A stretch of 64,000 bases of DNA from Bugula neritina (lineage: Eukaryota; Animalia; Bryozoa): the NCBI GenBank assembly GCA_964035545.1, contig OZ037766.1, positions 32,726,773 to 32,790,772 of the forward strand. Direction: 5' to 3'. The notes below the pieces were generated by a model. The model made no database searches. It had not been told where the DNA came from and saw only the letters and a program-made list of their open reading frames with translations. Below are positions 8,027-49,444 of the stretch, in pieces (the stretch's first letter is position 1; every line of letters begins with the position of its first letter). The translations under genes and the position numbers were made by a program.

Positions 8027-8296
8027 TCTCACATCTACCTCTAACAAATGCTCAGTAACCAATAACCTACTGTGAAGAAAACATGAAACATACAAGTTTA
8101 TTGATTTTGAAACATAAAAGTTTGCCTTGTAGTTACATATAACATCTGATTACAAGTGTGTTTGATTTCTATTTGTGATTGAAAATAATGCAGCCAATGA
8201 GCAGCTTTCTTACAAATAATTGACCACTTTCAAGCAGCAGCTTCAAGTGATTATGTTAGATGTTTGTTAAAGTATTATTGTAAGTTGCTAATATAA

Positions 8297-9597
<1,301 letters not shown>

Positions 9598-10531
9598 TGA
9601 TTCACCGTCATTATTTAGTTACTTTTTAATTAGTTGACTTTTAAATAAATTATGGTTTAGTTTTTAGTAACAACATTTATTTGACTATATATATCTTGAC
9701 ATTTCACATCTAGAATGTTTCTAAACAAAACAAGATTTTTTCTAGATTTTGGCTTTAGACTTTTTTAAAATATATATTGTTTTGGGTGACATGCAATTAT
9801 TTTTAAGCTGAGATATAAGCAAAAAAGAAATGTTCTTTTCACAATAAACATTGAACATAAAATTTAACAGAAAAATGGGATTATTTATTGAAAACTAATA
9901 TAATGATTAATTATAGAGTGGAGATTCAGCTGTTAAACTTTAATTTCTGCAATAATTTTTGGTTTTACTGATAATTGTACAGCTTCAGTAAATAGCAAAT
10001 ACATGAAGGTGGCTGTGAATAAACTATTAAAAAATGTTAAATAAGCGCAGGTAAAAACTGTATGCATGATATTGTAATACCATGTAGAATAATTACTTGC
10101 AATAAACACTGTAGCTATTAAAAACCAAGTACAGCGGTAAGCAGTGGTTTTTAACTTGAAGAGAAGACACTATCTAACATCATTGTCAACAGCTCCATGA
10201 AAATATGTCAATAGCTATAGGTTGGAGAAATAGACATCATTTTCCACATACATGTTATTGGTGATATTAAAAGAGGCTGTTAATCACTCAAACTTGGTTA
10301 GTAAAAATAGGTACTAGTTTAGAAGCAAAGACAACCGCAAGTTAAAAGTTTACTGAATTGAACAAATTTGCAAAGTTATACAAAAGTATACCACATTATA
10401 CAAGGGTTATAGCCTGCATTCAGTAAGTAACTCTACTTATGCATTCTAGAAGATTATAGGTATAAGACTATGACTCGCTTCTGGAAGTTACAGCGAAAAG
10501 CTAAAACTCTGATAAAATGATCTTTCACTTT

Positions 10532-13500
10532 TTATTTCAAATTGAGTCTATAATGCATAACCCCTCTAGCAGCTTCAAAAGAGCTTGAGCTATACCCAGG
10601 TCCAATCTCACATCTCTGATCTTGTTGGTGGTAGTTTACATTCACACAACCAGTAGTTATACAAACAGACAGACAACTTAGCAAGGAAGGATAACTCAGA
10701 GGTTGAACAGATAATCCGTGCATCTGGAATCCTGGATGGATCTCAAACTTTTGCCAGATGTCTCTTGTATCTATAAATAACATAAATCAAAAAGATGGTT
10801 ATTTTAAAAATATGTTAGTCTAGGAAAACATAATATATAGTTGTGTGGTTTTGTGTTGAAAATAAAAGGAATGGATTAGTGATAGTCGCAAAACAACAAC
10901 CATCATAATTCAAACAGTTCAAAGGTCACCATTTTACAGAAGGTTATGCACAAAATAAGTAATGGAATATATACATGATTGTCACAGTACATCAAATAAA
11001 AACAAAAATCTGCTCAGCATTGAAGCCAGTAAAACAAAACTTGTAGCAGACATATACTTAACTCATTTAAATTTTAGAAGTTGAACACTGATTATGTTTT
11101 CATTGCTGATTTGCTTATAAAACTTTTATTTTCAACTCAACAAATATTTTGTTTATGCTAGTAAATAGAGCTTTGTTTTGTATTTTCTCTTGTTTTAAGT
11201 GGGGGAAGCTGGCGCACCTTTCATTCCTTTCAATCTGCTTTTAACATCTTTTAGAACAGAATTTTCAAGATGCTGTCCAGGCAGTCTCTTTCTAGCTATT
11301 GTACTTTTTTGAAAATAAAAACTAATTAAAAACAAAAAAGCAAGTGCAGCAAGTATATTATAATACTGCATCAGTGATTCACCTGATTTCCTTGCTTCAT
11401 TCAAAACAGGTTTTATCTCTGAAGTTATCGTCCCATGAATAGTCAAAGCACCTGGTTTCATTGTGAACACATCACCTTCTTGTTTACAGCCAGCAAAATC
11501 TACCAGTTGGTCTTCTTGATAGACTGAGCTCCAGATGTTCAGACAGGAAATAGATCCAACAGCTACTTGTTCTGCATTAAATCCTCCTGTAAACAGAAAA
11601 TATATAGCTTTGAATTTCATGCAGTCATATAGGTGTCAACTATTTACAGAAATAATTTCCCAATTGTCTTCTAACTTTAATCTCTGGAATTTACTTGGAG
11701 GAAAACCAAATGAATAAACAATAATCAAGTAAAGCACATATTACGTGTTGAAAGTGTGTATAGCGTTTATTGTTAATGGCCACCAGCAATTCTTATACAA
11801 CTGATCTCCAATTAAATAGTAACTATTATATTAAGGGTTTGTCAAAGTGATTACTCATAGCAGCAGATTTTAGAGTTATACTCTTTTTGTTTGCCGGAAT
11901 TCACAACTTGAAGATGTTGGCATAAAACTATATTTTCACTTGATTTCAGCAAGAAATGTTGCAGGCCTGATGCTAGTCGAATTTTTTTTCTTGTTATGTA
12001 CCTGAGTATTTTAACTATTTAAATATTTTGCAAAACTTCCAGCAGATTATAACATTGTTTCTTTAAACATCTGTAAAAAGATGTGTTGAATACAAACATA
12101 CCAAACAACTCATCTTGATCACTGAACAGTACAAGTCCCACAGCATAGCCTCGTTGGGAATCTAATGGTTTCTTAATAACTTTGCTAGATGTAAACTATC
12201 ATCCCTGGTTTGTAAACAGGCACAATGTGGTCTTCAGTCTCTACTGATGTTTTATTGGTAAAACTGTCGTGAAAACTACAATTAATGAAATTGTGAATAT
12301 GCTATAATGAATGATAATATGTGATAAAACTTTTATCAGTGATAATTTGACACTAACTAATAAGCTTCAAGTAAAGAACAAGTCTTGCTATAAAAATCAG
12401 TATACACCATCTAAATTATTAAAATTGATATTAAAAAAGATAATATAAATGCCATAAATGATTGTCAAAAATACTACAATAACAATAATTACCTTGTTAG
12501 ACCATCCAGGAATGGAGCTTATAACTTTGATGTTAATGTAGTAGATATTTATTCTCTACTTTGACAATATTGATTTAAATGCAACAAAATATTTAATATA
12601 ACATAAGTGAAAAGTTACTCAGCAGTCTATGCTACATGTTAGCTGACTGAAAGTGTAGCATAGAATGAGAGCTGAGAGTAAAATATACTTCAATGGATGA
12701 ATCATTTCAGGAAGCTGATGGTGTAAAAAACTATTTATATAACTTAGTCATAGTGAAATCATACACATGAGGAAATCTTGTTGACTTTCGTGTGCAAATT
12801 TGTCATAGCTATAAAAGCAAAACAGCTACATATACATGACTAATGTAATGGTTTTCTAATTATGGGCACGTTGGTTAACTTTGTTTGTTTTGATGAGAGC
12901 AAGAAATTTCACTGGCATTCCAATTAATTACACTCCCACCTGAAATTTCTAAAAGTGACTTGTAATTTTGAATGTATGTTTAGCTCGATCGGACTAGTAC
13001 AACTAATTTTGATATTGGTCGAATTAAATAGACTCTTTTATTGGAGTCTTTGGGGTATGTTTTACTACCAACAAGCACCTTAACTGATCTAACAACGCTG
13101 TCATGAGACAGGTTGCATTCTACGACACGTGCTAAAGGCCACTGATTTCTTACTGTATTGTCATCACACAGTAGAACGATATCCCCCACCTTGATCTCTG
13201 GTACTTTATTTACCCATTTTTGCCGCGACTGTAAATAAAGCAAGTATTGCTTGCGCCAGCGTGTCCAAAATTCATTTGCCAACTGCTGGACCACTCTCCA
13301 ACGCTTCCTCGCATATATGTCTGCCTCCTCAAATGTGCTTGGAGGTGGTAGAACAACGTCAGACTTCATAGTCAACAACATGTTTGGGGTGATTGGAAGC
13401 ATGTCATCAGTTGTTGAGGTTAATGGGCGACAGTTTATGATGGCCATCACTTCATAAAACAAAGTTCGTAGCAAAGAGGTAGAGAGCCTCCCACCATGTC

Positions 13501-16500
13501 TCGTTCCAAGGCCTTGTAGCACAGAGCGGATAGTCCTTATCTGCCTTTCCCACACTCCTCCAAAATTGCTAGAGTGAGGAGGGTTGAAATTCATTGTGAT
13601 GTTCATAGATTTAAGTTTGCTGTCGGTCCCATCACTTTGTAGAAGACTCGCGGCACCAATGAAGTTGGTACCTTGGTCTGATTGAATTGTCTGAATTGGA
13701 CCCCTAATGGCTACCACAGTCCTGATAGCGTTTATAAAGCTGTCAGTAGTCATGTCCTCTAAAAGTTCAATGTGAACAGCTCGTGAGGCCATACATGTGA
13801 CTATCAAGCCATATCGTTTCGATTCCTTTCTACCATCCTTGACAATAAAAGGGCCGAAACAATCTAATCCACAGTGGGTGAAAGGAGGGGCTTCGTTAAC
13901 TCTCACTGATGGTAATGTTGCCATTTGTGGTGTCAAGGGTTTAGCTTTGATTCTTTTACATGTTACACAGAGACGTAGCTTTGATGAAATTGTGGATTTA
14001 CCACCGATGATCCAAAATCCCTGTGATCTTATTTTAGACAGAGTATACTCTAAGCCAAGATGTCCTAGTTTTGCATGTGTGTCATTTATGATAAGCGTAG
14101 TGAGATGACTATGCTTAGGTAAGAGTAAAGGATGTTTTTCTTCGAATGATAGCAATTTACTGTTTTGTAGCCTTCCTCCCACCCTGAGTAGACCCGCCTT
14201 ATCTAGAAATGGGCATAGTTTTGCAATGGAGCTATGCTTAGATGTAGTCTGAGTTTGTTGGAGTTGCTTGATTTCTGGAGTGAAGAATTCTGATTGAACT
14301 GACTTGACCAAAGAGTGGAACGCTTTTTGGCGTTTCTCTTGCTGAGTGAGAGGGGTTTTGCATAGTGCTGTTTGGATTCTAGCAATAACCTTAAGAGTGT
14401 AATCTAGGTTAGAGAAAATGGTTATACGCTGACTAAGAGGAGCAAGGATGTGTTGAGTGGCTAATGAAACTTTCACTTCTTGATCGTCATGTGAGTTGAT
14501 GAATTTTTTCTGATGAGGGAGTATGAGAGGTTCATTCCACAAGAAGTCTGGTCCTGTGAACCAAATGCACTCAGGAGAGAAAATTTGCTTTGGTGATAAC
14601 CCACGTGATGCATGATCTGCAGGGTTGAGTTTAGTTGGGACATGAAACCAGTTGTCAGCATTGGAGCCGTCACGGATTTGCTGAACTCGATTTGCAACAA
14701 ATGTGTGATATCTAGCCTGTGTGTTCTTTATATAACCAAGAACTACTTCTGAGTCAGAATAAAAGTACTGAGCTACATTGTCCATACCTAGCTCTTCTGC
14801 TGCCTTGAGGCTTAAATCTACAGCCCCACGTGCTGCTTGAAGTTCCAATCTGGGAACAGTAATAGCTTTGAGCGGAGTGACACGACCTTTGCTACAGATT
14901 AAAGCAACATGCACACGTTTGGCTGGGCTTACAAATCGCAAGTAGGAGCATTGGCCGTAGCCCGTTGTACTCGCGTCGCTAAAGGTATGGAGCTCAACCT
15001 TAGCAGGTGTTCCAAATGATGATGGTACGTAGTTTCTAGGAATTGATAGGTGTTCAAGATCGTTGAGGCTTTGTTTCCATGGCAACCATTTTGCCAGCAT
15101 GCTTTCATCTAAAGGATCATCCCAGTCTAAATGTTTTCTGCAAAGATCTTGGAGAACCATTTTACCTTGCAGTATAACCGGTGATATGAGGCCAAGTGGA
15201 TCAAAGACCGAGGCTACATTTGAGAGCACACCTCGTCTAGTGTTGGGCTTATCAGCGAGATTAACTTGAAACTGAAAGGAATCTTGCTCAGAATTCCACA
15301 TCAATCCCAAAGTTCTTTCAGTTGGAAGACAGTCAGAGTTTAGGTCAAGATCATGCAGAGTTGCAGATTGTTCAGATTTGGGGAATGAATTTAATACTTC
15401 TTTCTCGTTAGAAAGAATCTTGTGCAAGTGTACTTTACCTTGTTGGCAAATTCTCATTGCCTCAGTAAGTACTTTTGTTGCAGATGTTGCGTCAGGCATA
15501 CTAAGCAAGCCGTCATCCACATAGAACTGATTTCTAATGAAGTTTCGGGCTTGTTGACTTGATGGATCATCTGTGCTGTATTGGTCAGCCAGATAACGTA
15601 GGCCATATGTTGCACATGCAGGAGACGAGGTCGCTCCAAACACATGCACTTTCATGCGGAACACTGCTATTTCACCACGTTCATCTAGCCAGAAAAATCG
15701 GAGATAATCTGTATCTTCCGTTGCAACACGAAATTGGTGAAACATTCGCTCAATATCACATGTAACAGCAATCTGTTCCTGGCGGAAGCGAAGGAGGATA
15801 CCAGTTAGACTGTTTAGATGATCTGGACCTGTCATGAGATAGTCGTTTATGCACTTTCCATCTGTCTTTGCAGCACCATCGAAGACTACTCTAATCTTGC
15901 CTGGCTTCTTTGGATGCCATACCTCGAAATGTGGTATGTACCATGTGCTGTCCTCATGGCTAGCTAAGCCTTGTGGAACTATTTCAGCCTCACCCTTGCT
16001 AATGAGGTCTTCCATGAACTTTTTGTACTGGTTTTCCAAGTTTTGATTCTTAGAGAACTTTTTCAGTAGTGAATTGAATCGGTTTTTTGCTGTTTTAAAA
16101 CTGTTATTTCGTGGTGGTTTGTGTTTGAAAGGTAGAGGCATGGTGACATGACCATCAATGATCTTTGTTTCTTGTTTCATGAGAGACAAAAATGCTCGGT
16201 CTTCTACAGAAGCCGCTTCTTTGTCTGTTACACATTCCTTGAAATCTTGAGCCAATATATTTATTATTTTGTTAATTTGTTTTGATGTTTCAGTTTGGCA
16301 TTTGAAAGATACCGTGGTTTTAGCTTTCTTGGGTGAATGAGTTACGGTTTTATTGACTATTGTTGTTTTGCTGCCTGAATTGTCATCATGTGTGTTATTT
16401 GTAGCTAGACTACCCATGATAACCCACCCTAGGTCAGTACGTACGCCAAATGGTTCATCGTCTGCGTCGTTTCCCACTACTACCTCTCTAGGTTTGAAGG

Positions 16501-19500
16501 CTAATGGGCAGTTGCCTCCAATGAGTAGACCTACTGAAATGTTTTGTCCCTTGACCATGTTTTTTGCCAAGTCTTGTAAATGTGGCCAGGCGGTAAGAGC
16601 ACCCGCCTGTGGAATAGACTCATACTTAGCAGGTATTTCTTCTGCAGAATACACATTAGGAAGTTTCACCTCCTTATTGCAGCTATATCCTTTGATGATT
16701 AGGTCATCGGTTACCATTGTATCTAGCTCAAAGTTTTGGTGTGTCATTGTTGCCATTGGCAGTTTAGTTGGTTTTTTGGTGCATGTGAGTTGTTCAACAA
16801 TAGAATTGGTTATATAACATGAGTCGCTGCCTGAGTCAAGGTTGGCATATGTTAATACTTTTGTATGTGGATCTTTGACAGAAGAAACCCAAACAGGAAG
16901 AGTCATAGACATGAGTGTTTGTGATGTATTTATGGAAAGATTATTGCATACTGTGCTATCTTTATTTTGGTTTGAACATTGCATTTTACTTTCATCTGCT
17001 TGCTTTGTGGGTTGAGATGTGTATTTCTGGTGAAATATTGTGGGATGAGCTTGCTTACATGTCTCACATACTGGTTTCATGTTGCAGTTTTTGTAACTGT
17101 GACCGCTTACGGCACATTTGAAACATAAGCTGTTGCTAGCAAGGAAGTCATTTACTTGTTGAGCAGAAAGTTTTGCTAAATTCCAGCAGTGAGCAGTGTG
17201 GTGTTTCCATCTGGGTTTTTTGTTTGAGAGGCAGTATGCACATTCTGGTTCTTTTCTCTGCTTTTGGTCAAATGACAGGCTGTTTTGTTGTTTTGCTGAC
17301 TGGCTGTCAGTGTGTTGTGACTTATTAGCATGTTTTTGTTGATTTTTGACTAATTCTGAAGTTTTTGAAACTAGTGGTGTTGGTAATGTTGTTTCAGATT
17401 TTAATGTAATTGAGTGTTTGCTGTTGTTTTGTTTGGTGTATGGCTTGAATGCAGTTTTACTGGACCCACTTTTATATTTTTCTCTCAAATTGCTACAAGA
17501 AATTTTAGCCTCATGTGCTACAAAGTCTGCAAATTTATGAAAGGAAGGGAACACTTTTCTCTTTTCCTCCTCTGCAATGGCATGTCTTAACCATCGTTCT
17601 TGAAGGTTGTTGGGCAGAACACTCGCTAGCTTTTTGTTCTCCCGTTTTCTGTCCAGGACTTTCAAACCAGATATCTGCCTTGAGGCAGATAGACATTGGT
17701 TTAAGAAGTAACTGTAACTCTTGAGAGATTTGGCATCAGTTACTCTAGGCCATGCTTCTAGTCGGTCTAGAAACTGCTCTTCAATCAGCTCTTCCGAACC
17801 AAACTCAGTTTCGAGAGCATGTAATGCATCTTGATACGCATTTGAACTTTGCAATGAAAAATAGCCCCTTATAGCCTGCTTGGCATCGCCATCCACATAC
17901 TCTCTCAACAAATGGAGCTTCTGTAAATCGGTATATGGACAAGAACCAATCAAACCATCAAAGGCCAGCTTCCAATCTGCGTACTCAAGCGGATCACCAG
18001 TAAACTTGTCAGGAGTGGGAAGATGATTGGCTTGCATTGTCATAGCGGCGGCCATTGAGTCACCTATACTCTTCCCTATAGCAGCAGAGAAATCTGTAGT
18101 GGTCAGATTGGTAAGTGGGTTAGGTGATTGCAAGTGTGTATGTGTGGGATGAGTATTTTGGTGTGCGGGAAGATGAGCAGCTGAGTTGACTTGTGGATAT
18201 TGTTCATAAGGATCTTTGTGGATACCTGGGCTTTGGTGAGGCAACTCCTCCTTAGTCATTAAAGACTGCTTTATATCGTGAGCTGGTTGACCTCCAGTTG
18301 ATGGGAATTGATTTGAGAGGTCAATATGATGTGGAGAATGCAGAAATGGTGAAGGCTTCGATGAGTTATGAGATGCTCTAGAAGGGGGTCTCATGAGAGT
18401 ATCTCTAAGCTCAGTTTCAAGCTCATCGTCTAGGGCTTGCTGAAATGCATTTAGCTGAGCTTTCTCTGCATCGATTTCAGCTTTGAGTTTCAGCTCGGCA
18501 ATGTGGCCTTTGCGAGTGAGGATTTGCTCTTTGTGCTTGAGCTCAAGACGCTGTATTTCCTCTTCAACCTGCCGAGCTTCACACTCTGCTTGAAACTTTG
18601 CTTCAGCAGCAGCAACTTTAGCCGCAGATTTAGCTAATTGAGCTTTATAGTATGATGCGTTAGATTTGGAAGATCTAGATGTACCAGTAGTTCTTGTTTT
18701 CCAAGAACCACTAGCGGAATCAGGTGCATGAGATGAGGATATGTCACTAGCTCCAGAATGTCTAGAATTGCCAATATGGTGACTAGAATGATGAGATTTC
18801 TTTGACTTGGAGTGATTAGATTGATAATCAGAACTATGTACGCTGACGGATTTGGCAGGCCCAGCGCGTTCCGACTCAACTGAATTTTTTGACTTACTCG
18901 AGGAATGACTAGCATGCGATTTGACAATTTTTGAATTATCTGAGGGAGGGATGGATGGTAACACGCGAGATCTTACATCAACTTTTGCTATTTTGAAAGT
19001 GCTATTTTCGCCGTCAGAACTATTGGCGTCCATTTCATGAAGCCAATGCTCAAGTTTTGTTAAAATAGTTTTTCTATCGCCTGCAATACGATCAAATTCA
19101 CGCAGTATATTTCGCAGCTTCTCCTCACTTATACCTAAACCGCGAGCTTCTGTTAAATGTTGTTCGGCTTCTTGTACAGTTTGATTGTTTAGAAGCTGTT
19201 TTCGCAGCTCTTTTGCGCGAATTAATGTAATGTTGTCCGCCAATTCTTGAGTTACTAGCAAATGGAATTCACTAATAATTTCTAATGATATTTTTATATG
19301 CTCTAAGTGTTGCTGAACACGCAGCCGTGCGCTATGATAATGACTCATAGGCTACTGAATTTGAGTGCCAGCCAATGAAATTAATTGCTCTCAAAAAGTT
19401 TCTAATGTATGATTGTGCAATAGTGCATGCAAAACTAAGTAGTATTTGTCTAATATATGTAGCTGAATTTAAAAAATGAATACTGCACCTACTTGCAGTA

Positions 19501-22500
19501 TAAGACTGCCTCTATATGTATGATTTCACTATTACACAAGTAAATTTGATACCTAGTGTCAGTGATAAATAATATAAAGAACAGATTTACAGAATGAGTA
19601 TAAGGAAATGATTCCCTATGACTACAAAAAGACAAATATTTTCAATATTACAATACCCAGAAAAGAAATTATTTTTTAATCAAGTCTTGTGTGATAAAAA
19701 AGTAGTTTCTGTGTAATGTTTGATCAAAGCTAGCAACGTTCTACTGAATTCCAATGAGTCTGATACTGCTAATTTGTGTGATTAGCAGTGAATGAATTCT
19801 TAGAAGTAATGGTTACTTAGCTGTAACTTGTATGTATGACAGGAGTGTGAGTGCTGGTTACTATAGTGGTTGGCAGTGTAGCTATTGTTGACAATGCTGG
19901 AGACTTGGCAGTAGAGTTGATGGATGCTATACTGATCTAACAATGCTGAGGCTGGATCGGTAGTTGTCTTTTCTAGCTGCTGTTTGTCTCGCTGGTCTCA
20001 AGTTAGCGCAAGCCACTGGTTGTAGGATTAGCAAGCTGTTTACTCCAGTCACAAGTTTTCACTGTAAACTATCATCCCTGGTTTGTAAACAGGCACAATG
20101 TGGTCTTCAGTCTCTACTGATGTTTTATTGGTAAAACTGTCGTGAAAACTACAATTAATGAAATTGTGAATATGCTATAATGAATGATAATATGTGATAA
20201 AACTTTTATCAGTGATAATTTGACACTAACTAATAAGCTTCAAGTAAAGAACAAGTCTTGCTATAAAAATCAGTATACACCATCTAAATTATTAAAATTG
20301 ATATTAAAAAAGATAATATAAATGCCATAAATGATTGTCAAAAATACTACAATAACAATAATTACCTTGTTAGACCATCCAGGAATGGAGCTTATAACTT
20401 TGATGTTAATGTAGTAGATATTTATTCTCTACTTTGACAATATTGATTTAAATGCAACAAAATATTTAATATAACATAAGTGAAAAGTTACTCAGCAGTC
20501 TATGCTACATGTTAGCTGACTGAAAGTGTAGCATAGAATGAGAGCTGAGAGTAAAATATACTTCAATGGATGAATCATTTCAGGAAGCTGATGGTGTAAA
20601 AAACTATTTATATAACTTAGTCATAGTGAAATCATACACATGAGGAAATCTTGTTGACTTTCGTGTGCAAATTTGTCATAGCTATAAAAGCAAAACAGCT
20701 ACATATACATGACTAATGTAATGGTTTTCTAATTATGGGCACGTTGGTTAACTTTGTTTGTTTTGATGAGAGCAAGAAATTTCACTGGCATTCCAATTAA
20801 TTACACTAGAGCTCTGAACCCAGATCAAATTACTCTCATTTTCAGCAATATTCACCTACCAAGCAAAACAAACAATTAGGATTTTAAGACTGAGTACATT
20901 TGTTACAGTAGTTTGAGAATTGATTTGTAGTAGAGCAAAACCTACCGTGTACCAATTATCCGTCACAATTTCCTTCATTGAAAAGCAGTAGAAGTACCAC
21001 TTGTACAATTCTGTCTCAAAATCAATAACAGAGATGACCTTGCCTCTGCTTACAAAGGTCATTCTACTGTTCCTCAATTCAAAGACAAACCAATTGTCTT
21101 GCTCTAAAAAATAATACTGAACTATGACAAGCAAGTTGTTTTACTTTGTCAAACCCGCACACATCTTGATTTATTTAATATTTAGTTTGATGCAAATAAG
21201 TCTCTTAAAACTGGTAATAGAAAACATTGTTTTTATATTTTATAAACTAAGTCATTATATGTAGGCTACCTTGTTTGAAGGATACGTGTTGTTGCTTTAT
21301 TTTTAAATATTGTAAACCAATACTATAGGCTAAATGTTGAATGTTAAATGTCATTATTTCCCACACCTGGCGTAGCAATGCTAAGAATTGTACTTCCTAT
21401 AGCGTCATTCCAGCTATCAATTTCAGCCCAGAAACAGATGGTGAAGTTGATACCGGGCATAGTGACATTGGCTCCAGCCCAGTTGGTGACATCACGAACT
21501 TTATTAGTTAGAATGTAGCTACCTGGCATTTCAATATCTACTAAGTTAAAAAACCGCTAAAAAGCTCTGAAAAATATAAATAAACTTGAAAAATATTGTT
21601 TTAATGCAATTATTCATTAAGCTAAATAGCTTTTCCATCAGTCATATACAAAGACAGTGCAATAGGCAGGGCATGTATAAGACGCGTTTATTATATTTAT
21701 AGAATGCATATATAAGGAGAGTAGAACTAGAGGATAGAGTGATATTGTTTGTAAAGTATAGCTAGTAAGTTAATGAATGATATGTTTCTTATTCTAAAGT
21801 CACAGCTGTATGGAGTACAAACATGCTGATGTTTGCATTAATTTATTGCAGGGTACTTAAACTTGCTGGTACCTTCACATACTGATACCTTCACATTCTG
21901 ACACCTTCCCATACTGATACCTTCCCATACTGACACCTTCACATACTGACACCTTCACATACTGATACCTTTATATACTGACACCTTCACATACATTGAA
22001 TCAAAATACAGGATACCTGGACAATATTTTTGCCTATTAAACTTAAAGCTAAACTGTTACTATAAATGACCACTATATATAACCGTTGTATTATAACGCA
22101 GGACCTAAAGTAAAACTGTTAGGCTCAAAGAGTTTGTGGCGTTGAATATTATAAGCTAACAGTTATTAGTAAAACACTCTAGCTTTCTGAGCAATATGAA
22201 ACTGTACTTTTACGCCATTGTCTATTATCTGTATGCAACAGCAGCAATTTATATCAAATCTTCTTCAATATCACCATCCAGGCCCTTACAAACCAAGTAC
22301 CAGAAAGAGCCCTATTGGACAGTGCTGGTTGCAAATGACCTAGTTTTGTGTGACAGGAAATTAGACACCATGGAAAAAAGACTGGAGCTATTGAAGCGAG
22401 TTCCAAACTGAGCAGGGCAATATTGAACATATGGTAGAGGCTATGGTAGCACGGCAGCTAATTTGAGAATAGAAAAGGATGATGAGAATGGGTATGCTGA

Positions 22501-26390: not shown

Positions 26391-27237
26391 CCTACCCTGC
26401 TCTCTCTGCATGTTAATATTTGATAGTTTCAATTTAGTATATTTATTATTGAAATTATCAAATTCTTAAAATTAATCTTCACTTATAGTTCCCAAAACCA
26501 CTTATGTATAAAAATATGCTGCCTATATAGCCCTATATATTGTAAAATTTTGCAGGTAATATTTGAAATTTGTTTAATAATTAATTTTCTGTAGTCTTCA
26601 GTCTTCTTTTACCAAGACGATAGGCTGTGGGGGATTTTATATCACACTATTTATACAACTTGTTATGTAATACTAAATGCTGAAAGTGTAAGACCCTTAT
26701 CAAACTTAGAATCTCTGCTGAATAGAATCCTTGCAAATAGCCGTTGCACAATCACTTGTAAAACCTCTTAGGCAGCATCATGCAAGTAATTTGGAATGGT
26801 CTTTTGATGTTACCTTATGAAGTAAGTATATATAATCAATTTTATTTTCTGTATTAATTCTAATTGAAATAGGATTTTGCCACTAAATCAAATCTATTGC
26901 ATTCAGTTTAGGAAATGAGTTTATTCCAGGATTGAATAAACGTTCATCAAAGTCTAACCAAGTAGGCGGAAGCTGGTGAATGAGAAACTCAAAATATATC
27001 AGTTAAAGTAAAATGAAATTCAGAAAGCAGCCATCTTGTCTCAAGTTTGTAGGTTTGATCTTTAGCAACTCGTTATTTATAAGTGTTTCAAGTTTCCTAA
27101 CGTTATTTCTTATTCATAAAATTGGCTGTTTAAAAGTGCTGCACATAATTTGATTGTTAGAGTTGAGAATTAATTGTGACCTTTCTTTTACCATTTTTAT
27201 GTTAGACCTTTTGACTTGATAGGTGTAGTATTGCATT

Positions 27238-28480
27238 GTGTCACAGTAGTACAGTATGTCACAGTAGTACAGTATGTCACAGTATTACAGTATGTCACAG
27301 TAGTACAATATTTCACAGTGGTATATATAGTATGTCACAGTATTACAGTATGTCACAGTAGTACAGTATGTCACAGTAGTACAGTATATCACAGTAGTAC
27401 AGTATGTCACAGTAGTATAGTATGTCACAGTAGTACAGTATGTCACAGTAGTATATATAGTATATCACAGTATTACAGTATGTCACAGTAGTACAGTATG
27501 TCACAGTAGTACAGTATATCACAGTAGTACAGTATGTCACAGTAGTATAGTATGTCACAGTAGTACAGTATGTCACAGTAGTACAGTATATCACAGTATA
27601 ACAGTATGTCACAGTAGTACAGTATGTCACAGTAGTACAGTATGTCACAGTAGTATAGTATGTCACAGTAGTACAGTATGTCACAGTAGTATAGTATGTC
27701 ACAGTAGTACAGTATGTCACAGTAGTACAGTATGTTACAGTAGTATATATAGTATGTCACAGTATTACAGTATGTCACAGTAGTACAGTATGTCACAGTA
27801 GTACAGTATGTCACAGTAGTATAGTATGTCACAGTAGTACAGTATGTCACAGTAGTACAGTATGTTACAGTAGTATATATAGTATGTCACAGTAGTACAG
27901 TATATCACAGTAGTACAGTATGTCACAGTAGTACAGTATATCACAGTAGTACAATATGTCACAGTAGTACAGTATGTCACAGTAGTACAGTATGTCACAG
28001 TAGTACAGTATATCACAGTATAACAGTATGTCACAGTAGTACAGTATGTCACAGTAGTACAGTATGTCACAGTAGTATAGTATGTCACAGTAGTACAGTA
28101 TGTCACAGTAGTATAGTATGTCACAGTAGTACAGTATGTCACAGTAGTACAGTATGTTACAGTAGTATATATAGTATGTCACAGTATTACAGTATGTCAC
28201 AGTAGTACAGTATGTCACAGTAGTACAGTATGTCACAGTAGTATAGTATGTCACAGTAGTACAGTATGTCACAGTAGTACAGTATGTTACAGTAGTATAT
28301 ATAGTATGTCACAGTAGTACAGTATATCACAGTAGTACAGTATGTCACAGTAGTATAGTATGTCACAGTAGTACAGTATGTCACAGTAGTACAGTATGTC
28401 ACAGTATTACAGTATGTCACAGTAGTACAGTATGTCACAGTAGTATATATAGTATATCAAGGTATTACAGTATGTAACAG
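27238..28480. repeat. 18-bp satellite (tatgtcacagtagtacag) with 422-bp higher-order structure
   Basis: The gtatatatag variant recurs at alternating 130/292-bp spacing. Confidence 0.95.
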
Positions 28481-37080: not shown

Positions 37081-42095
<5,015 letters not shown>

Positions 42096-43674: not shown

Positions 43675-46600
43675 ATGAAGGTTAGTACTAATCATACTAC
43701 TCTCTATTGCCTGTACTTTCTAGCTGACTCAAACTGTCTTTCTTTTTATTTAGAGTTGCATGATGAAATTCTATGTTTCTATGCAAATGTTGCTCATATA
43801 CTTTGCTCTAAAACCTATATACTCTTCTAATTATAACTAAAGAAATGTTTCTTATATTAAAGATTTAAATACTTAGTCTATGATAAAGGAGTTATCCACA
43901 AATCATAAGTTTTTAATAATACATATTAATACAATTTCTTAAAGGAGTTATGGTAAAAGTCTTAGACAAATACATTCTAAGAAATGTTGATCTTTCAAGG
44001 CAGCCAAATTTTATCACTTTGATGCTTACAATCAGAGTTAATTACAATTTTGAAAATTAAATAAAATCTTATTTTTAAAAGTCAATGAGAATTTACACTC
44101 CAAAGGGTGGAGTATATTAAAATAGACTGTTGTAACAAACCCTCTAGTTCTAACATTTCAAAACCAATTTCAAATTGTGGTTTTTCCACAAGTAAAATCT
44201 TATAATGAAATTACAAGCTCTCAGATTTGTAGGTTACAGGAGAAGTAAAGTTAGCACAAGGTTTGTCAATGTGGCTAAAATATTTGATATTTGGTAACAT
44301 TCACTACTATAGAAGAAATATGAAACATTGGATGCTTTTCAGCTTATAATTGTGAATCATGATTACATATGACTCATATTTCTGAGTCATGAGTGATTAT
44401 GACTCATATAGTATTTGAATCTTACTATAAACTTTGTTACTTTTGTTAGAAATATGTGCAAATGACATCTCACACCATTTTCCATGCTAACTAAAAGCAA
44501 ACTTCTATACAAATGTTAAATATGCGACAAAGACCTCCATTTTAATAGATTGAGATCCTGTTCTGTAAACATGGTTAGGAGGAACATCTTTAACTCTTTG
44601 GAAACTGCTCCACAGCAGCTGAAGTGTTGGTGTCATCCCAGTTAGACGCTATTAATTTATTTTGGTACAATATATATTTTATGTACAATTTATTTGAATA
44701 TTATTGAAATATAATGCATATTTAAATAAACTTGGATCAATTGTTTGCTATTTAGCTCATAAATAAAGTCCTTTGATCAGTATTAATTTATTAATTTTGC
44801 ATATTCTATACTTTTTGTTGTTTGAAAAAATATTTCTTTAATAGGTATTCATTAAAAATAATGTCTATTATTAATGTATTACTGTTTTTTGTCCCACACA
44901 AATCTATGAAAAGTGGGCTATTGTTTCAGATACTTTATATTAGCTATTATAGCTATAATTAGCACATTAGCTATTTAGCAATAAATACAACAGTTATATA
45001 CACTATTATGGTACCAAAATAAAAAATGGCGTCTAATTGGGAAGCGTCTATCTGGGGTGAAACTGGAGTGTTTTGATATAAAGATAGGCAGCTTTTTATT
45101 AACTTCGAGGAGGGAGGGTCTGTGCGGGATCAAAATCACTTCTTGCATCATGCACAGTCTACAGCCTACTTGAGCAAAGCTTTATTACCAGAGATTCTCA
45201 CAAGGACAGCAATTTAGAATTTTATAAATTTCTCAGCTTAGTTTTATTTAAGTTCTAGAGCATTCTGTTTGAGGTGCAAGTGTGTACCTACCAGTCTTGT
45301 CTCCGGGTAACACCGACAGTTAAAAATAGAAATAATCTCCAGATAATTACGTGTAGTTTATAGATAAGTTTATCACCAAGGAAAGGTATTAAATTCCTAA
45401 AGTAGATTTATAATTTGCCAACATTATACTTAGTTCATGTTTTTATAGGACTAGTAAAACTGAAAAAAAAAACATTAACGGATTAAAGTGTGATTACAAA
45501 TGGTACCGAAGGGTAGAACTATTCCGGAATTCTGCTAAATGTTTACTTTAGAAATTCTTTAGAAATTCTTCATAAAGTTTTCAAACTATTTGTAGTCTTT
45601 ACCTACAATTATTGCCCAAGACATTTCGCAATAACTACTTTATCTTCGCAGTAACTCATAGCTTCTTATTACAAAACAAAGCAGATATATTATAATATAC
45701 TGAGAAACATGTTAGGTTCTACTAACTATGGTTTATACTGTAACAGGTGACTGTTGTTTTACAGCGAGCTCTCTACACAAAGTTGTACTTGGGTCTACAG
45801 TTACTCCTCGCTGGACTTATTCATACAGACTGTCTCGTTAACAATAAAGATGGTATTGAAGTGGTACGGCCAAAACTCTTCTACAGTCCAACACTTTTCC
45901 TATCATAAGAAATCAATTCTAGCTAACAAAAGCATTGAGAAATCATTTTATTCCCACACAAAGAATGGAAAACCCATAAACTCGCTTTTAAATAAATTAT
46001 TTATGGAACGCAATGGCAAGATATCAGTAGCGTTATATTATTATATTGTATTGCTTTATTTATATTGCTAATATTATAGCATAATTATATAATTTTATGT
46101 TATGCTATATCCTTATATCTCTTATATTAAATTACATTTTGTACCTTACTATAATATAATATTTCAGCACATACATACTTAACATATTGGTGGTAACTTT
46201 TCTATTTCCTTTACTCTTTAGGTGCTGAACTTAAAACAACTAAGAGACCGCCTGGTGGAAATAGCAAGTCCCTCAGCTCTCCCCCACTCACAAGTTCCCT
46301 CTGTATCCACCACTGTAGCACCTTCTACCACAACAGACCCAAGGGTTGGTTTTTTAGTAATGCAGGATACGTTACAATAGTTATTGATTGCTTATCACAT
46401 AACATATTCACCATTTTGTTGGCTAATGTTTAAAGGGCAAGTTAGTCTGTCCCCAACCCTTAACCTGGTTCGTGACAGAAAGAGACGAGAGGTTCTGTGA
46501 ATCTGATTTAGACTGCTCATATCCCACAGAGAAGTGCTGTGATTGGTTTGACAAGAAACACTGCCTAAGGGGAATAGATACTACCCCTCATCCAGGTGCA

Positions 46601-49444
46601 CATCTCTGCTCATTATAATATACTGCTAGATACTACCCCTCACTCACAACTCTGTTTATTATAATATACTGCCAAATACTACCCCTCATCCAGGTACATA
46701 GCTCTGTTTATTATAATATACTGCTAGATACTACCCCTCATCCAGGTGCACATCTCTGCTCATTATAATATACTGCTAGATACTACCCCTCACTCACAAC
46801 TCTGTTTATTATAATATACTGCCAAATACTACCCCTCATCCAGGTACACAGCTCTGTTTATTATAATATACTGCTAGATACTACCCCTCATCCAGGTACA
46901 CAGCTCTGTTTATTATAATATACTGCTAGATACTACCCCTCATCCAGGTACACAGCTCTGTTTATTATAATATACTGCTAGATACTACCCCTCATCCAGG
47001 TACACAGCTCTGTTTATTATAATAATTTACTAGATACTACCCCTCCTTCAGGTTGACATCTTTAGTTACCTGAGTAAGCTTTACAAGTTAGATGTTACCC
47101 CTTGCTAATTTTTATCAGTTTTATGGAAAAGTTCAATTACGTAATACAATGTCACAGTATCTTATTAGGACAAATTACAATAATATAATACAATGTCACA
47201 AAACCTGCAGGACAATGCTCAACTGTGATAAATGATGGCTGCTTGGCTGACCACGTGAGTTGTGAGTACGATGGACAATGCGGAAGTATAGATGAGAAGT
47301 GTTGTTTCAACTTTGGCTGTGGCTACATGGAGTGTCAGAATATACGTCAGGTAATCTTTAAAACATCTCTGCTGATGAATATATCATAGTAGGCTATATG
47401 GTTTTACTGCGGAGGAAAATTCTCCAAGTAGTATGAATGCTGCATATTCATTCACTGCAGTTTCTGCACCACATTTTACAGTAGGCAACTTTTAGTTGAA
47501 GTGAATAGAGTAAACGCTATGCATTGCCTAAAACCCCTCAGTTGTGGTCCCAAATCCCCCCTCACCATTTGCATTACGCCCCTTTTCTGTAACATTCTCT
47601 ATCATGCTGACTGTAGCATCTGGCGTGTCCCAGCAGCTCCGAGATTTCTCTAACGTCTGCTGCCAACTGCACAGCAGACGTTAACTGTACTGCAGAGGAG
47701 AAGTGCTGTGAGACAGATGGTGGATACAAGTGTGTCAGCGGCATCAGTACACTGCCCAGACCAGGTATGGTGTTGTAGGGTAACATATTGTTATTAGACA
47801 GTGGTATCACTACCCAGACCAGGTATGGTGTTGTAGAGTAACATATTGTTACATCCTGTATCACAGTGTCACTATATACTCTCTAATGCCATCCCCTAGG
47901 GTTCTGCCCCATGCCTGTTAGTGGGAGAGATACAGAGTGTACTGACAAACAGCAGTGTGAGTACGACTCCCAGTGCAGCTCCTCTCATCACAAGTGCTGC
48001 CTCGACCCAGATTGTGGACGTCACGTCTGCTCTGATATGAATAGGGTATGAAAAGAATGTTCACTGTTCTATGATCATATTATTAATACCTTTCCCACAA
48101 CATACCACATATTTTATATATATTTTATATTTATATTTTATAGAACATGTAGTACACATTTTCTAGTGTATTATATATTATGGTATACTTTATATGACTT
48201 AGCTTTTATAGTATCTGTTGTATGTCATATATTATATATGTTGTTGTTTAGTATATTATATAATACATGTTTTAGTATGCTTTATACTTGACATGTATTT
48301 CATATGTTGTAATTGACATGTTACTTATTATATGTTTCATATTATATGATAGATATTGAATACAATATATTACTATCCATCCAGGACTTCGCATGCCCAG
48401 TCACTAACCCCACTCAGTTTCCCACCAACTCCAGCTCTTCATGCTCAGATATCTGTGGAAGTTTTGGAATTCTGTGCTGTCCAATTGGTGTGGACCCACA
48501 AGACAACCTGGTAAAGCACTGCATACCAGGAGTGTTACACCTTCCCAAGCCAGGTATGTTGGTTACTGTTTGTTTACTTGTCTCCTAGCTATCAACTCTC
48601 TAGAAATAATTCTATACAACACATGTTTAAAGTACATTTCAGCAATTAAATAGACATATTTGTGTGACCTTATAGGTCAATGCCCCACCCCCGTGGAACA
48701 GAGCAACGTAACGTGTTCTCCAGACTCCCTGGACGCTTGTCTCTACGACTCTGAATGCTGGTCAGAACACAAATGCTGTGAGAATAGCTGTGGGTTTAAA
48801 GACTGTGTTCAGCCAGAAGATCACAGGGCGGTAAGTAAAGATGCTGCGTTCTTTTTAAACAAAAGTGTGTGGACCAAATGACGAGCTCAGTGGAAAGCTG
48901 AGGGCAGCTTTAATTAGTAACATGATGTCATATTGTATGACCAAATCAGGGATAGCTTGGAATTGTTTCATGAAATCAAAAATGCAAAAATATATAAATA
49001 GTTCTGCAATGAAGTATCTGTAAATTCTCATGACCCACAGTTGATTGATTGATACATTTCTGTTAGAGATACTATACTACATACTCGGCCATTGTTTTGC
49101 CAGTTTTGGTGCACAGAAAGACAGCGCAGGTGTACTGAAATGTGCCCCTCCCCAATACCTTGGTACATGACTCTCACAGATAGTTTATCAGGTTGAGAAA
49201 CCAGTCTTTAGAGTCTGTGGTCTAGTTGGTTGCATGGCTTCTGGTTAGTTAGTAGTTGATGATTTCACAGATAGTTATCTGGGATTAGTTACATGTTTGT
49301 GGCATGCAGCTGTAAACAGGATTACATGTAGCAAGGTTATCTTCATATCTCTATTTAGTGCAATGTGGATAGTACTGACCTCTTTACTTATTTCCTTTGC
49401 AGGTACTACTAGAAAAGGTTGTGGAGCTCATGGGAGGTGCCTAA
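43675..49444 (+). CDS. Secreted multi-WAP protein 2, [6Cys-8Cys]x3, ~391 aa (paralog of gene 1)
   Basis: Exons 43675-43680 (MK; same caacATGxAG|GT context as gene 1), 45765-45852 (signal peptide), 46222-46343 (S/T/P-rich), 46436-46595, 47211-47350, 47617-47764, 47900-48045, 48385-48553, 48676-48830, 49403-49444. Shares WFDKKHCL, DMNR|DFACP and PKPG motifs with gene 1. Confidence 0.82.
46575..47055 (+). repeat. ~52-bp x10 tandem repeat spanning an exon end and splice donor
   Basis: tactacccctc recurs at 46579, 46631, 46677, 46729, 46781, 46827, 46879, 46931, 46983 and 47035; most copies retain CAG|GT. Confidence 0.9.

What the first reader, a model, noticed from the sequence alone, without database searches (positions are those of the whole stretch)
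19358..19614. Inverted, degenerate copy of the LTR U3 region inside the leader, ending ~10 nt before the gag-pol AUG
Seen: five colinear blocks of the leader are reverse-complementary to the first ~235 nt of the LTR. They are 19358-19371 with 12912-12925 (12/14), 19376-19393 with 12894-12911 (16/18), 19454-19465 with 12823-12834 (12/12), 19517-19532 with 12750-12765 (16/16) and 19605-19614 with 12699-12708 (10/10). The region spans U3 through the TATA box. Inference, two options: (a) long-range pairing of the 5' leader with the 3' U3 circularises the genomic RNA and may gate translation or strand transfer (analogous to Ty1 cyclisation or DIRS internal complementary regions); (b) an inverted promoter copy (ATATAAA near 19572) drives antisense RNA across the PBS.
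Basis: partly seen in the sequence, partly recalled or inferred. Interest (0 to 1): 0.8.

Follow-up and report, generated by a model that had tools for sequence, protein, structure and literature searches.

The report
Mirror-image LTR copy in retrotransposon leader
In a young BEL/Pao retrotransposon of a moss animal, the last ~260 bases before the gag start codon are a decayed mirror image of the first ~230 bases of its LTR; related families each keep their own version, so it most likely lets the two ends of the RNA genome pair.

Summary
All five blocks are exact as reported. A gapped alignment joins LTR 12699-12930 to leader 19614-19353 in inverted orientation: score 100 against 43 +/- 5.5 for dinucleotide shuffles, z about 10.

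The element is an intact BEL/Pao retrotransposon on the minus strand. Its LTRs are 100% identical, the target-site duplication (TSD) is CTAGA, and the ORF is 2122 aa.

The feature is not private to this family. In 10 of 17 BEL/Pao elements from this genome, another bryozoan and unidentified assemblies, the element's own leader matches its own LTR in inverted orientation better than any of 34 cross-family pairings. Direct orientation shows nothing. The blocks are colinear, lie 5-335 nt upstream of the AUG, and fall in U3. Predicted duplex gain is -23 to -46 kcal/mol, against -9 +/- 4 cross-family. Mismatches favour G:U over A:C on the sense strand, 30:9.

Best reading (about 0.5): a long-range leader-to-3' U3 RNA pairing kept by selection, comparable in principle to Ty1 or HIV-1 cyclisation. 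I found no report of this for BEL/Pao.

The parts
12185..12189 (.). Target-site duplication CTAGA (left copy)
   Evidence: Same 5 nt at 20806-20810
12190..12932 (-). 3' LTR, 743 nt, TG..CA; LTR position 1 = window 12932
   Evidence: 100% identical to 20063-20805 at offset 7873
12699..12930 (-). U3 arm: LTR positions 3-234, complementary to the leader arm
   Evidence: Gapped inverted alignment, z about 10; predicted helices of 19, 13, 12, 10 and 9 bp
12269..12277 (-). AGTTTTCAC motif in the LTR (positions 656-664), complementary to the 9 nt after the 5' LTR; likely start of R. Second copy at 20142-20150
   Evidence: Family-specific covariation with the PBS-position motif in most of the 18 elements
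12933..12941 (-). Polypurine tract AGGTGGGAG abutting the 3' LTR
   Evidence: Read from the sequence; a similar tract precedes the LTR in M1, M2 and C
12980..19348 (-). gag-pol ORF, 2122 aa, BEL/Pao
   Evidence: Pfam Peptidase_A17 2.6e-48, DUF5641, DUF1759, Integrase_H2C2
19353..19614 (-). Leader arm: degenerate inverted copy of LTR positions 3-234, ending 4 nt before the AUG
19349..20062 (-). 5' untranslated leader, 714 nt, with a single upstream AUG (at 19428)
   Evidence: 1 uAUG against 10.6 +/- 2.4 in shuffles; the antisense strand is not depleted
20054..20062 (-). PBS-position motif GTGAAAACT (does not match a tRNA 3' end)
20063..20805 (-). 5' LTR
20806..20810 (.). Target-site duplication CTAGA (right copy)

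Best explanation
The last ~260 nt of the 5' UTR is a diverged reverse-complement of the first ~230 nt of the LTR. Genomic RNA runs from R in the 5' LTR to R in the 3' LTR, so it carries U3 only at its 3' end. The leader arm can therefore pair with the 3' U3 arm, either within one RNA or between two co-packaged RNAs. This would form a long, interrupted duplex whose loop-side end lies between the gag AUG and the polypurine tract.

I propose that this pairing is kept by selection as a cyclisation element. It would hold the 3' R close to the 5' R-U5-PBS region and so help minus-strand transfer. That would be useful if R is only about 45 nt and priming is by the RNA's own 5' end. Because it covers the bases directly upstream of the AUG in a scanned 5' UTR, it could also switch the RNA between translation and packaging or reverse transcription.

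Shown: the homology; the family-specific conservation of complementarity; the own-family-only predicted duplex energy; the sense-strand wobble bias; the depletion of upstream AUGs.

Inferred: that the duplex forms in vivo, and what it does.
For: 1. The similarity is real: z about 10 against shuffles, with a direct-orientation control at background.

2. Own-versus-cross test on 18 BEL/Pao elements. The own-leader/own-LTR inverted score is the unique maximum among 34 row and column comparators for A, B, C, D, E, F, W1, M1, M2 and N1. It is also the unique maximum for G, but G's match is of a different kind. W2 and Hc are borderline. In direct orientation only 1 of 18 is a maximum (first seen). 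LTRs and leaders give no blastn hits between families.

3. The architecture is shared. Blocks lie 5-335 nt upstream of the AUG and are colinear-inverted. In A and F, LTR position x matches roughly x nt upstream of the AUG.

4. All blocks lie upstream of the likely R start, so they are in U3.

5. Cofold ddG for own pairs is -39.6 (A), -28.9 (B), -46.0 (C), -31.0 (F), -35.4 (W2), -23.1 (M1) and -39.1 (M2) kcal/mol. Cross-family pairs give -9.0 +/- 4.2, with a minimum of -20.5.

6. Transition mismatches are G:U 30 against A:C 9 on the sense strand. P = 0.001 against 0.5, and P = 0.003 against the cross-family null fraction of 0.53.

7. Changes are shared by both arms in homologous blocks. B has T/T where M2 has A/A. 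A has ACTAT in both arms where M1 and W1 have ACTGY in both. In the 95%-identical element, leader 1375 T>C is matched by A>G at U3 78 in its own 3' LTR, and two further changes keep G:U.

8. Elements lacking the feature form a single clade in a quick Pol tree. The feature is therefore old and phylogenetically structured.

9. Upstream AUGs are depleted on the sense strand only, so the arm is part of a scanned mRNA leader.
Against:
- The wobble bias rests on 39 mismatches. Family A alone shows none: 6 G:U against 9 A:C, and sense ddG -39.6 against antisense -41.2.
- ADAR-type A-to-G editing of a non-functional duplex would give the same bias.
- The duplex in A is patchy, with 94 gap columns.
- In the old dead fragment L009 the arm is no better conserved than the rest of the leader: 86% against 85-87%.
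- Families C to F exceed the null only modestly (z 2.2-2.9), although each is top-ranked.
- A core motif shared between families, RTG-N4-CAC, could be a protein-binding site rather than a pairing element.
- The arm lies 450-710 nt from the PBS, not next to it as in Ty1.
Confidence: 0.5

Rival explanations
1. Duplicated regulatory DNA. The U3 5' region is an enhancer or transcription-factor site cluster. Its inverted copy downstream of the RNA start acts as a second, orientation-independent enhancer, or as an antisense promoter driving RNA across the PBS and 5' LTR. Both copies would track the same factors.
For: A core motif RTG-N4-CAC is shared by both copies in five families. A TATA-like ATATAAA sits at 19572. 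TATA-like boxes fall inside the best blocks of C and E.
Against: Factor sites do not need colinear 20-40-nt near-identical blocks. The sense-strand G:U excess is not predicted by this model. The TATA region of A aligns poorly. The likely RNA start is near LTR 656, so the copied part lacks the core promoter. No ORF of 100 aa or more lies on the antisense strand of the leader or 5' LTR.
Confidence: 0.2
2. Non-functional by-product. An inverted U3 copy is occasionally re-created next to gag, by a reverse-transcription error, autointegration-type inversion or gene conversion, and then decays neutrally. Each family would show a copy of a different age.
For: The copy ends at the LTR terminus, which is a natural DNA end. 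Run lengths of perfect identity in A are compatible with uniform decay (my estimate). There is no extra conservation in L009. Both arms share indels, for example GCG in B against its absence in M2.
Against: It needs the same rare event at the same place in at least 10 lineages separated by 0.2-1.5 substitutions per site in Pol. No standard step of LTR replication copies U3 into the leader. The identical blocks are too short for efficient homologous conversion. It does not predict the sense-strand wobble bias unless the duplex forms and is edited.
Confidence: 0.17
3. Chance similarity or shared low-complexity composition.
For: Both regions are AT-rich.
Against: z about 10 against dinucleotide shuffles. 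The direct-orientation and cross-family controls are at background.
Confidence: 0.01

Closest known systems
Ty1 CYC5-CYC3 cyclisation (yeast Ty1/copia element)
   Same: [quoted passage not shown]
   Different: The Ty1 motifs are short and CYC5 adjoins the extended PBS. Here the arms are about 230-260 nt, sit 450-710 nt from the PBS, abut the gag AUG and mirror the start of the LTR. The superfamily is also different (BEL/Pao).
HIV-1 genome circularisation (gag region with 3' U3/R)
   Same: A 5'-3' RNA interaction shown in vitro between the terminal ~1-kb regions of the HIV-1 genome (abstract of PMC1976439). From my own recollection, not read here, it involves the 3' U3/R.
   Different: From my own recollection, the HIV-1 5' partner lies inside the gag coding sequence and is short. 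Here the 5' partner is a non-coding mirror copy of U3.
Ty3 bipartite primer-binding site
   Same: 5' and 3' (U3) sequences of the RNA are bridged during initiation of reverse transcription (own knowledge, not checked here).
   Different: In Ty3 the bridge is the tRNA primer, not direct RNA-RNA complementarity.
DIRS internal complementary region
   Same: An internal sequence is complementary to terminal repeat sequence.
   Different: DIRS elements have a tyrosine recombinase and inverted or split repeats, and use the region to rebuild their termini. This element has direct LTRs, a TSD and a DDE integrase.
Flavivirus 5'-3' cyclisation sequences
   Same: Family-specific, co-evolving 5'-3' complementarity that forms a genome panhandle (own knowledge).
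   Different: That is an RNA virus replicase system with short motifs and no reverse transcription.

Membership tests
BEL/Pao LTR retrotransposon | Pao-type aspartic peptidase (Peptidase_A17) | tested here: met
   E = 2.6e-48, 164.5 bits against a cutoff of 22.3
BEL/Pao LTR retrotransposon | Gag DUF1759, Integrase_H2C2 and C-terminal DUF5641 | tested here: met
   All three above the gathering score; RVT_1 is below its cutoff (21.3 against 29.6)
BEL/Pao LTR retrotransposon | Direct LTRs with TG..CA ends and a short TSD | tested here: met
   743-nt identical LTRs and a 5-bp CTAGA duplication
BEL/Pao LTR retrotransposon | PBS complementary to a tRNA 3' end | tested here: not met
   No TGG-type PBS after the LTR. 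Instead GTGAAAACT pairs with LTR 656-664. No tRNA set was compared.
Retroelement 5'-3' cyclisation element (Ty1 CYC type) | Complementarity between the 5' region and the 3' end of the genomic RNA | tested here: met
Retroelement 5'-3' cyclisation element (Ty1 CYC type) | Complementarity kept through sequence change (covariation) | tested here: met
   Own-versus-cross matrices and block-level shared changes. The number of single-base compensatory events is small.
Retroelement 5'-3' cyclisation element (Ty1 CYC type) | 5' partner adjacent to the PBS | tested here: not met
   The leader arm is 450-710 nt downstream of the PBS position
Retroelement 5'-3' cyclisation element (Ty1 CYC type) | Duplex forms in vivo and is needed for reverse transcription | not testable with these tools
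DIRS-like element with internal complementary region | Tyrosine recombinase and inverted or split terminal repeats | tested here: not met
   Integrase_H2C2 and DUF5641 domains, direct LTRs and a TSD
Antisense promoter in a retroelement leader | Transcripts starting on the antisense strand near 19600 | not testable with these tools
   No RNA data. The TATA-like ATATAAA at 19572 exists but the promoter part aligns poorly.

The most novel reading that the evidence does not exclude
A whole clade of BEL/Pao retrotransposons, found in bryozoans and in relatives from unidentified assemblies, keeps a 200-350-nt co-evolving RNA duplex between the AUG-proximal leader and the start of the 3' U3. It would enclose gag-pol and the polypurine tract in one loop. 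Together with Tf1-like self-priming and a very short R, it would form a previously undescribed replication architecture for this superfamily.
Probability: 0.4. Interest if true: 0.75.

Novelty: new variant of a known kind. Interest (0 to 1): 0.62.

Why it matters
BEL/Pao is the least studied LTR superfamily, and nothing I could find in the searchable literature describes its RNA cis-elements. A long, family-specific 5'-3' complementarity that persists while the underlying sequences turn over would extend genome cyclisation, known from Ty1 and HIV-1, to a third retroelement lineage and to a much larger scale. It also gives a simple sequence signature, own leader against own LTR in inverted orientation, that can be surveyed across animal genomes. 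Combined with the apparent self-priming motif, it makes the replication mechanism of these elements directly testable.

Tried and rejected
Extra families therefore came from the look-up of encoding contigs instead.
- RNA.duplexfold on full-length arms gave meaningless whole-length duplexes. I replaced it with cofold ddG.
- Whole-LTR palindrome idea (leader = inverted copy of the entire LTR): rejected. LTR beyond nt 350 against the leader minus its last 350 nt shows no own-family signal, mean z 0.07.
- Within-family covariation: the copies are 95-100% identical. Only one compensated pair and two G:U-preserving changes were found. B and B2 are nearly identical.
- Conservation among diverged solo LTRs: paired positions are slightly more conserved (0.84 against 1.49 variants, P = 0.009), but this is expected from how pairs are defined.
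- Leader as an intron (GT after the LTR): unlikely, given sense-strand uAUG depletion across the leader.
- Rfam: no family matched. There are no tRNA genes in the window.
- CCAAT boxes appear in some blocks, but at about the number expected by chance (my own estimate).
- Family G's 24-30-nt match lies next to the LTR end and looks like PBS/self-priming pairing, not the U3 mirror.
Full report
**What is there**

The window holds one full-length LTR retrotransposon on the minus strand.
- The LTRs are 12190-12932 and 20063-20805. They are 743 nt, identical at every position, and start TG and end CA.
- They are flanked by a 5-bp duplication, CTAGA.
- Between the LTRs lie a 714-nt leader (20062->19349) and one 2122-aa ORF (19348->12980).
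- The ORF carries the BEL/Pao markers Peptidase_A17 (2.6e-48), DUF1759, Integrase_H2C2 and DUF5641.
- A polypurine tract, AGGTGGGAG, abuts the 3' LTR.

The identical LTRs show that this insertion is very recent.

**Check of the observation**

A gapped local alignment of the reverse-complemented leader against the LTR joins them into one colinear alignment. It covers LTR 3-234 (window 12930-12699) and window 19353-19614, with 161 matches, 39 mismatches and 94 gap columns.

Its score of 100 compares with 43 +/- 5.5 (maximum 64-65) for dinucleotide-preserving shuffles and 49 for the same sequences in direct orientation. Four other scoring schemes give z of 5.8-7.9. Against the whole 7.1-kb internal region, the three best inverted LTR matches all fall in this segment.

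The arm ends 4 nt before the AUG.

**Is it private to this family?**

No. I compared 18 BEL/Pao elements:
- seven families from this genome (A = the window, and B to G);
- two from the bryozoan Watersipora subatra (W1, W2);
- one each from a sea star, a hemichordate and a fish;
- six from unidentified ENA or NCBI assemblies.

For every leader-LTR combination I computed the best local alignment in inverted and in direct orientation.

In inverted orientation, the own-family score is the unique maximum of its row and column (0 of 34 comparators as high) for A, B, C, D, E, F, W1, M1, M2 and N1. It is also the maximum for G, but G's match is of another kind. W2 and the hemichordate element are borderline, with 2 and 3 of 34 as high. 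Off-diagonal scores are 22.7 +/- 2.9. In direct orientation only one of the 18 diagonals is a maximum (earlier versions). If each diagonal had a 1/35 chance of ranking first, ten of 17 would have a probability of order 1e-11 (my calculation).

The LTRs and leaders of the different families give no blastn hits to each other. Only short core motifs are shared.

The elements without the signal (sea star, fish, N2, N3, N4, and weakly the hemichordate) form one clade in a quick Pol tree. All other branches carry it (the careful tree search did not finish).

**Shared architecture**

In every positive family the best blocks lie 5-335 nt upstream of the gag AUG, and they are colinear in the inverted sense. 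In A and F, LTR position x pairs with the base about x nt upstream of the AUG. The signal is confined to the first ~350 nt of the LTR and the last ~350 nt of the leader. The remaining halves show nothing.

**Where is U3?**

The 9-12 nt after the 5' LTR are not a tRNA-type PBS. In most of the 18 elements they are complementary to a motif inside the same LTR, 80-145 nt before its end. In A this is GTGAAAACT pairing with AGTTTTCAC at LTR 656-664. The motif follows an initiator-like YAG and precedes AATAAA, and the two motifs covary between families.

This looks like Tf1-type self-priming. It places the RNA start near LTR 656 in A, so U3 would be about 655 nt and R about 45 nt. Earlier notes s1-472094 and s1-472096 raise a related idea for another family.

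Two consequences follow:
- All mirrored blocks are in U3, which the genomic RNA carries only at its 3' end.
- The TATATAA at LTR 192 is probably not the core promoter.

**RNA or DNA?**

Several results point to the sense RNA.

1. Cofolding the last 340 nt of each leader with the first 400 nt of each LTR, minus the two self-folds, gives -23 to -46 kcal/mol for the own pairs of A, B, C, F, W2, M1 and M2. Cross-family pairs give -9.0 +/- 4.2, with a minimum of -20.5. For A the model has 154 intermolecular pairs, including helices of 19, 13, 12, 10 and 9 bp.

2. Among transition mismatches in the own-family alignments of 11 families, 30 would be G:U and 9 A:C on the sense strand. P = 0.001 against an even split, and P = 0.003 against the cross-family null fraction of 0.53. 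The G falls equally often in either arm (first seen). A DNA-level explanation predicts symmetry. Selection for pairing, or A-to-I editing of a duplex that actually forms, predicts the bias.

3. The sense duplex is more stable than the antisense one in five of the seven strong families. This is weak evidence.

4. The leaders are strongly depleted of AUG on the sense strand only: 1 in A against 10.6 +/- 2.4 expected. The same holds for B to F, M1 and M2. The arm is therefore part of a scanned 5' UTR.

**Covariation**

Within family A the copies are too similar to say much. The 95% element has leader 1375 T>C matched by A>G at U3 78 in its own 3' LTR, plus two changes that keep G:U. By my estimate such a match has a chance of roughly 0.1.

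Between families, homologous blocks show changes present in both arms:
- B has T/T where M2 has A/A in TGTGTTGNCAC.
- B has GCG in both arms and M2 lacks it in both.
- A has ACTAT in both arms where M1 and W1 have ACTGY in both.
- A has TGATTTCAC where W1 has TGATATCAC, each in both arms.

This is concerted change. On its own it does not separate selection for pairing from conversion, or from co-evolving protein-binding sites.

**Mechanism I consider most likely (about 0.5)**

The leader arm pairs with the 3' U3 arm in genomic RNA, within one molecule or between two. The loop-side end of the duplex lies between the AUG and the polypurine tract. The open end leaves two single-stranded arms of similar length, about 540 nt to the RNA 5' end and about 420-470 nt to the 3' R.

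This would tether the short 3' R near the 5' R-U5-PBS region and help minus-strand transfer, as CYC5-CYC3 does in Ty1 (PMC3681743) and as proposed for HIV-1 (PMC1976439). It would also occlude the AUG-proximal leader. The function is inferred, not shown.

**Rivals**

- Duplicated enhancer or antisense promoter (0.2).
- Recurrent non-functional duplication or conversion (0.17).
- Chance (0.01).

**Weak points**

- No RNA data could be obtained.
- The wobble statistic rests on 39 sites, and family A itself does not show it.
- The duplex is interrupted by many indels.
- Families C to F are only modestly above the null.
- The dead 79% fragment L009 shows no special conservation of the arm.
- The shared RTG-N4-CAC core could be a protein site.

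**Limits**

**Verdict**

Reading (a) is partly supported and reading (b) is unsupported. The feature is conserved in a BEL/Pao clade and appears undescribed in the literature I could search. I rate it a new variant of a known kind.

Noticed in passing
window 20054-20062 with 20142-20150 (and 12269-12277); also L043-L062: The 9-12 nt after the 5' LTR (GTGAAAACT) do not match a tRNA 3' end. They pair with a motif inside the same LTR (AGTTTTCAC, LTR 656-664) that follows an initiator-like YAG and precedes AATAAA. Family-specific variants covary in most of the 18 elements, including the fish, sea star and hemichordate ones. This suggests Tf1-like self-priming and a short R in BEL/Pao.
   Followed up: partly
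window 19349-20062: The 714-nt leader has one upstream AUG (at 19428, an 8-codon ORF) against 10.6 +/- 2.4 expected. The same sense-only depletion is seen in 7 other families.
   Followed up: yes
L049 against L050 (family G, 28% aa identity to A): In L049 an 18-24-nt perfect inverted match joins LTR 203-226 to the bases 5-30 nt after the LTR. The sister copy L050 diverges after 12 nt. This is probably a PBS/self-priming pairing and differs from the U3 mirror.
   Followed up: partly
L027/L029 (G000 C6:2106114-2107558): Two family-A LTRs are joined head-to-head in inverted orientation, both truncated near LTR 720-729, next to the 3' end of an element. This is a palindromic LTR-LTR junction.
   Followed up: no
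L009/L010 (G000 C3:19274689-19275372): An old 79% fragment keeps only the last 44 nt of the LTR, the leader and about 350 nt of gag. A 10-bp-period tandem repeat takes the place of the LTR.
   Followed up: partly
window 1173-1404/10545-10776, 2419-2665/11371-11617, 4156-4348/21340-21532, 3718-3857/20940-21079: The element sits inside one unit of a tandem duplication of about 9 kb, with 72-89% identity between units.
   Followed up: no
window 8194-9640, 21834-22009, 27097-28300, 40652-40956, 41670-42063, 46575-47030, 59954-60352: There are several short-period tandem repeat arrays (periods of about 8-10, 16, 18, 61, 37, 52 and 21 nt). The long ORFs at 8343-9629 are artefacts of the first array.
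   Followed up: no
window 12933-12960 and L054, L055, L045: The polypurine tract and its upstream context (GAAATTTYAGRTGGGAG) are conserved between families whose LTRs are otherwise unalignable.
   Followed up: no
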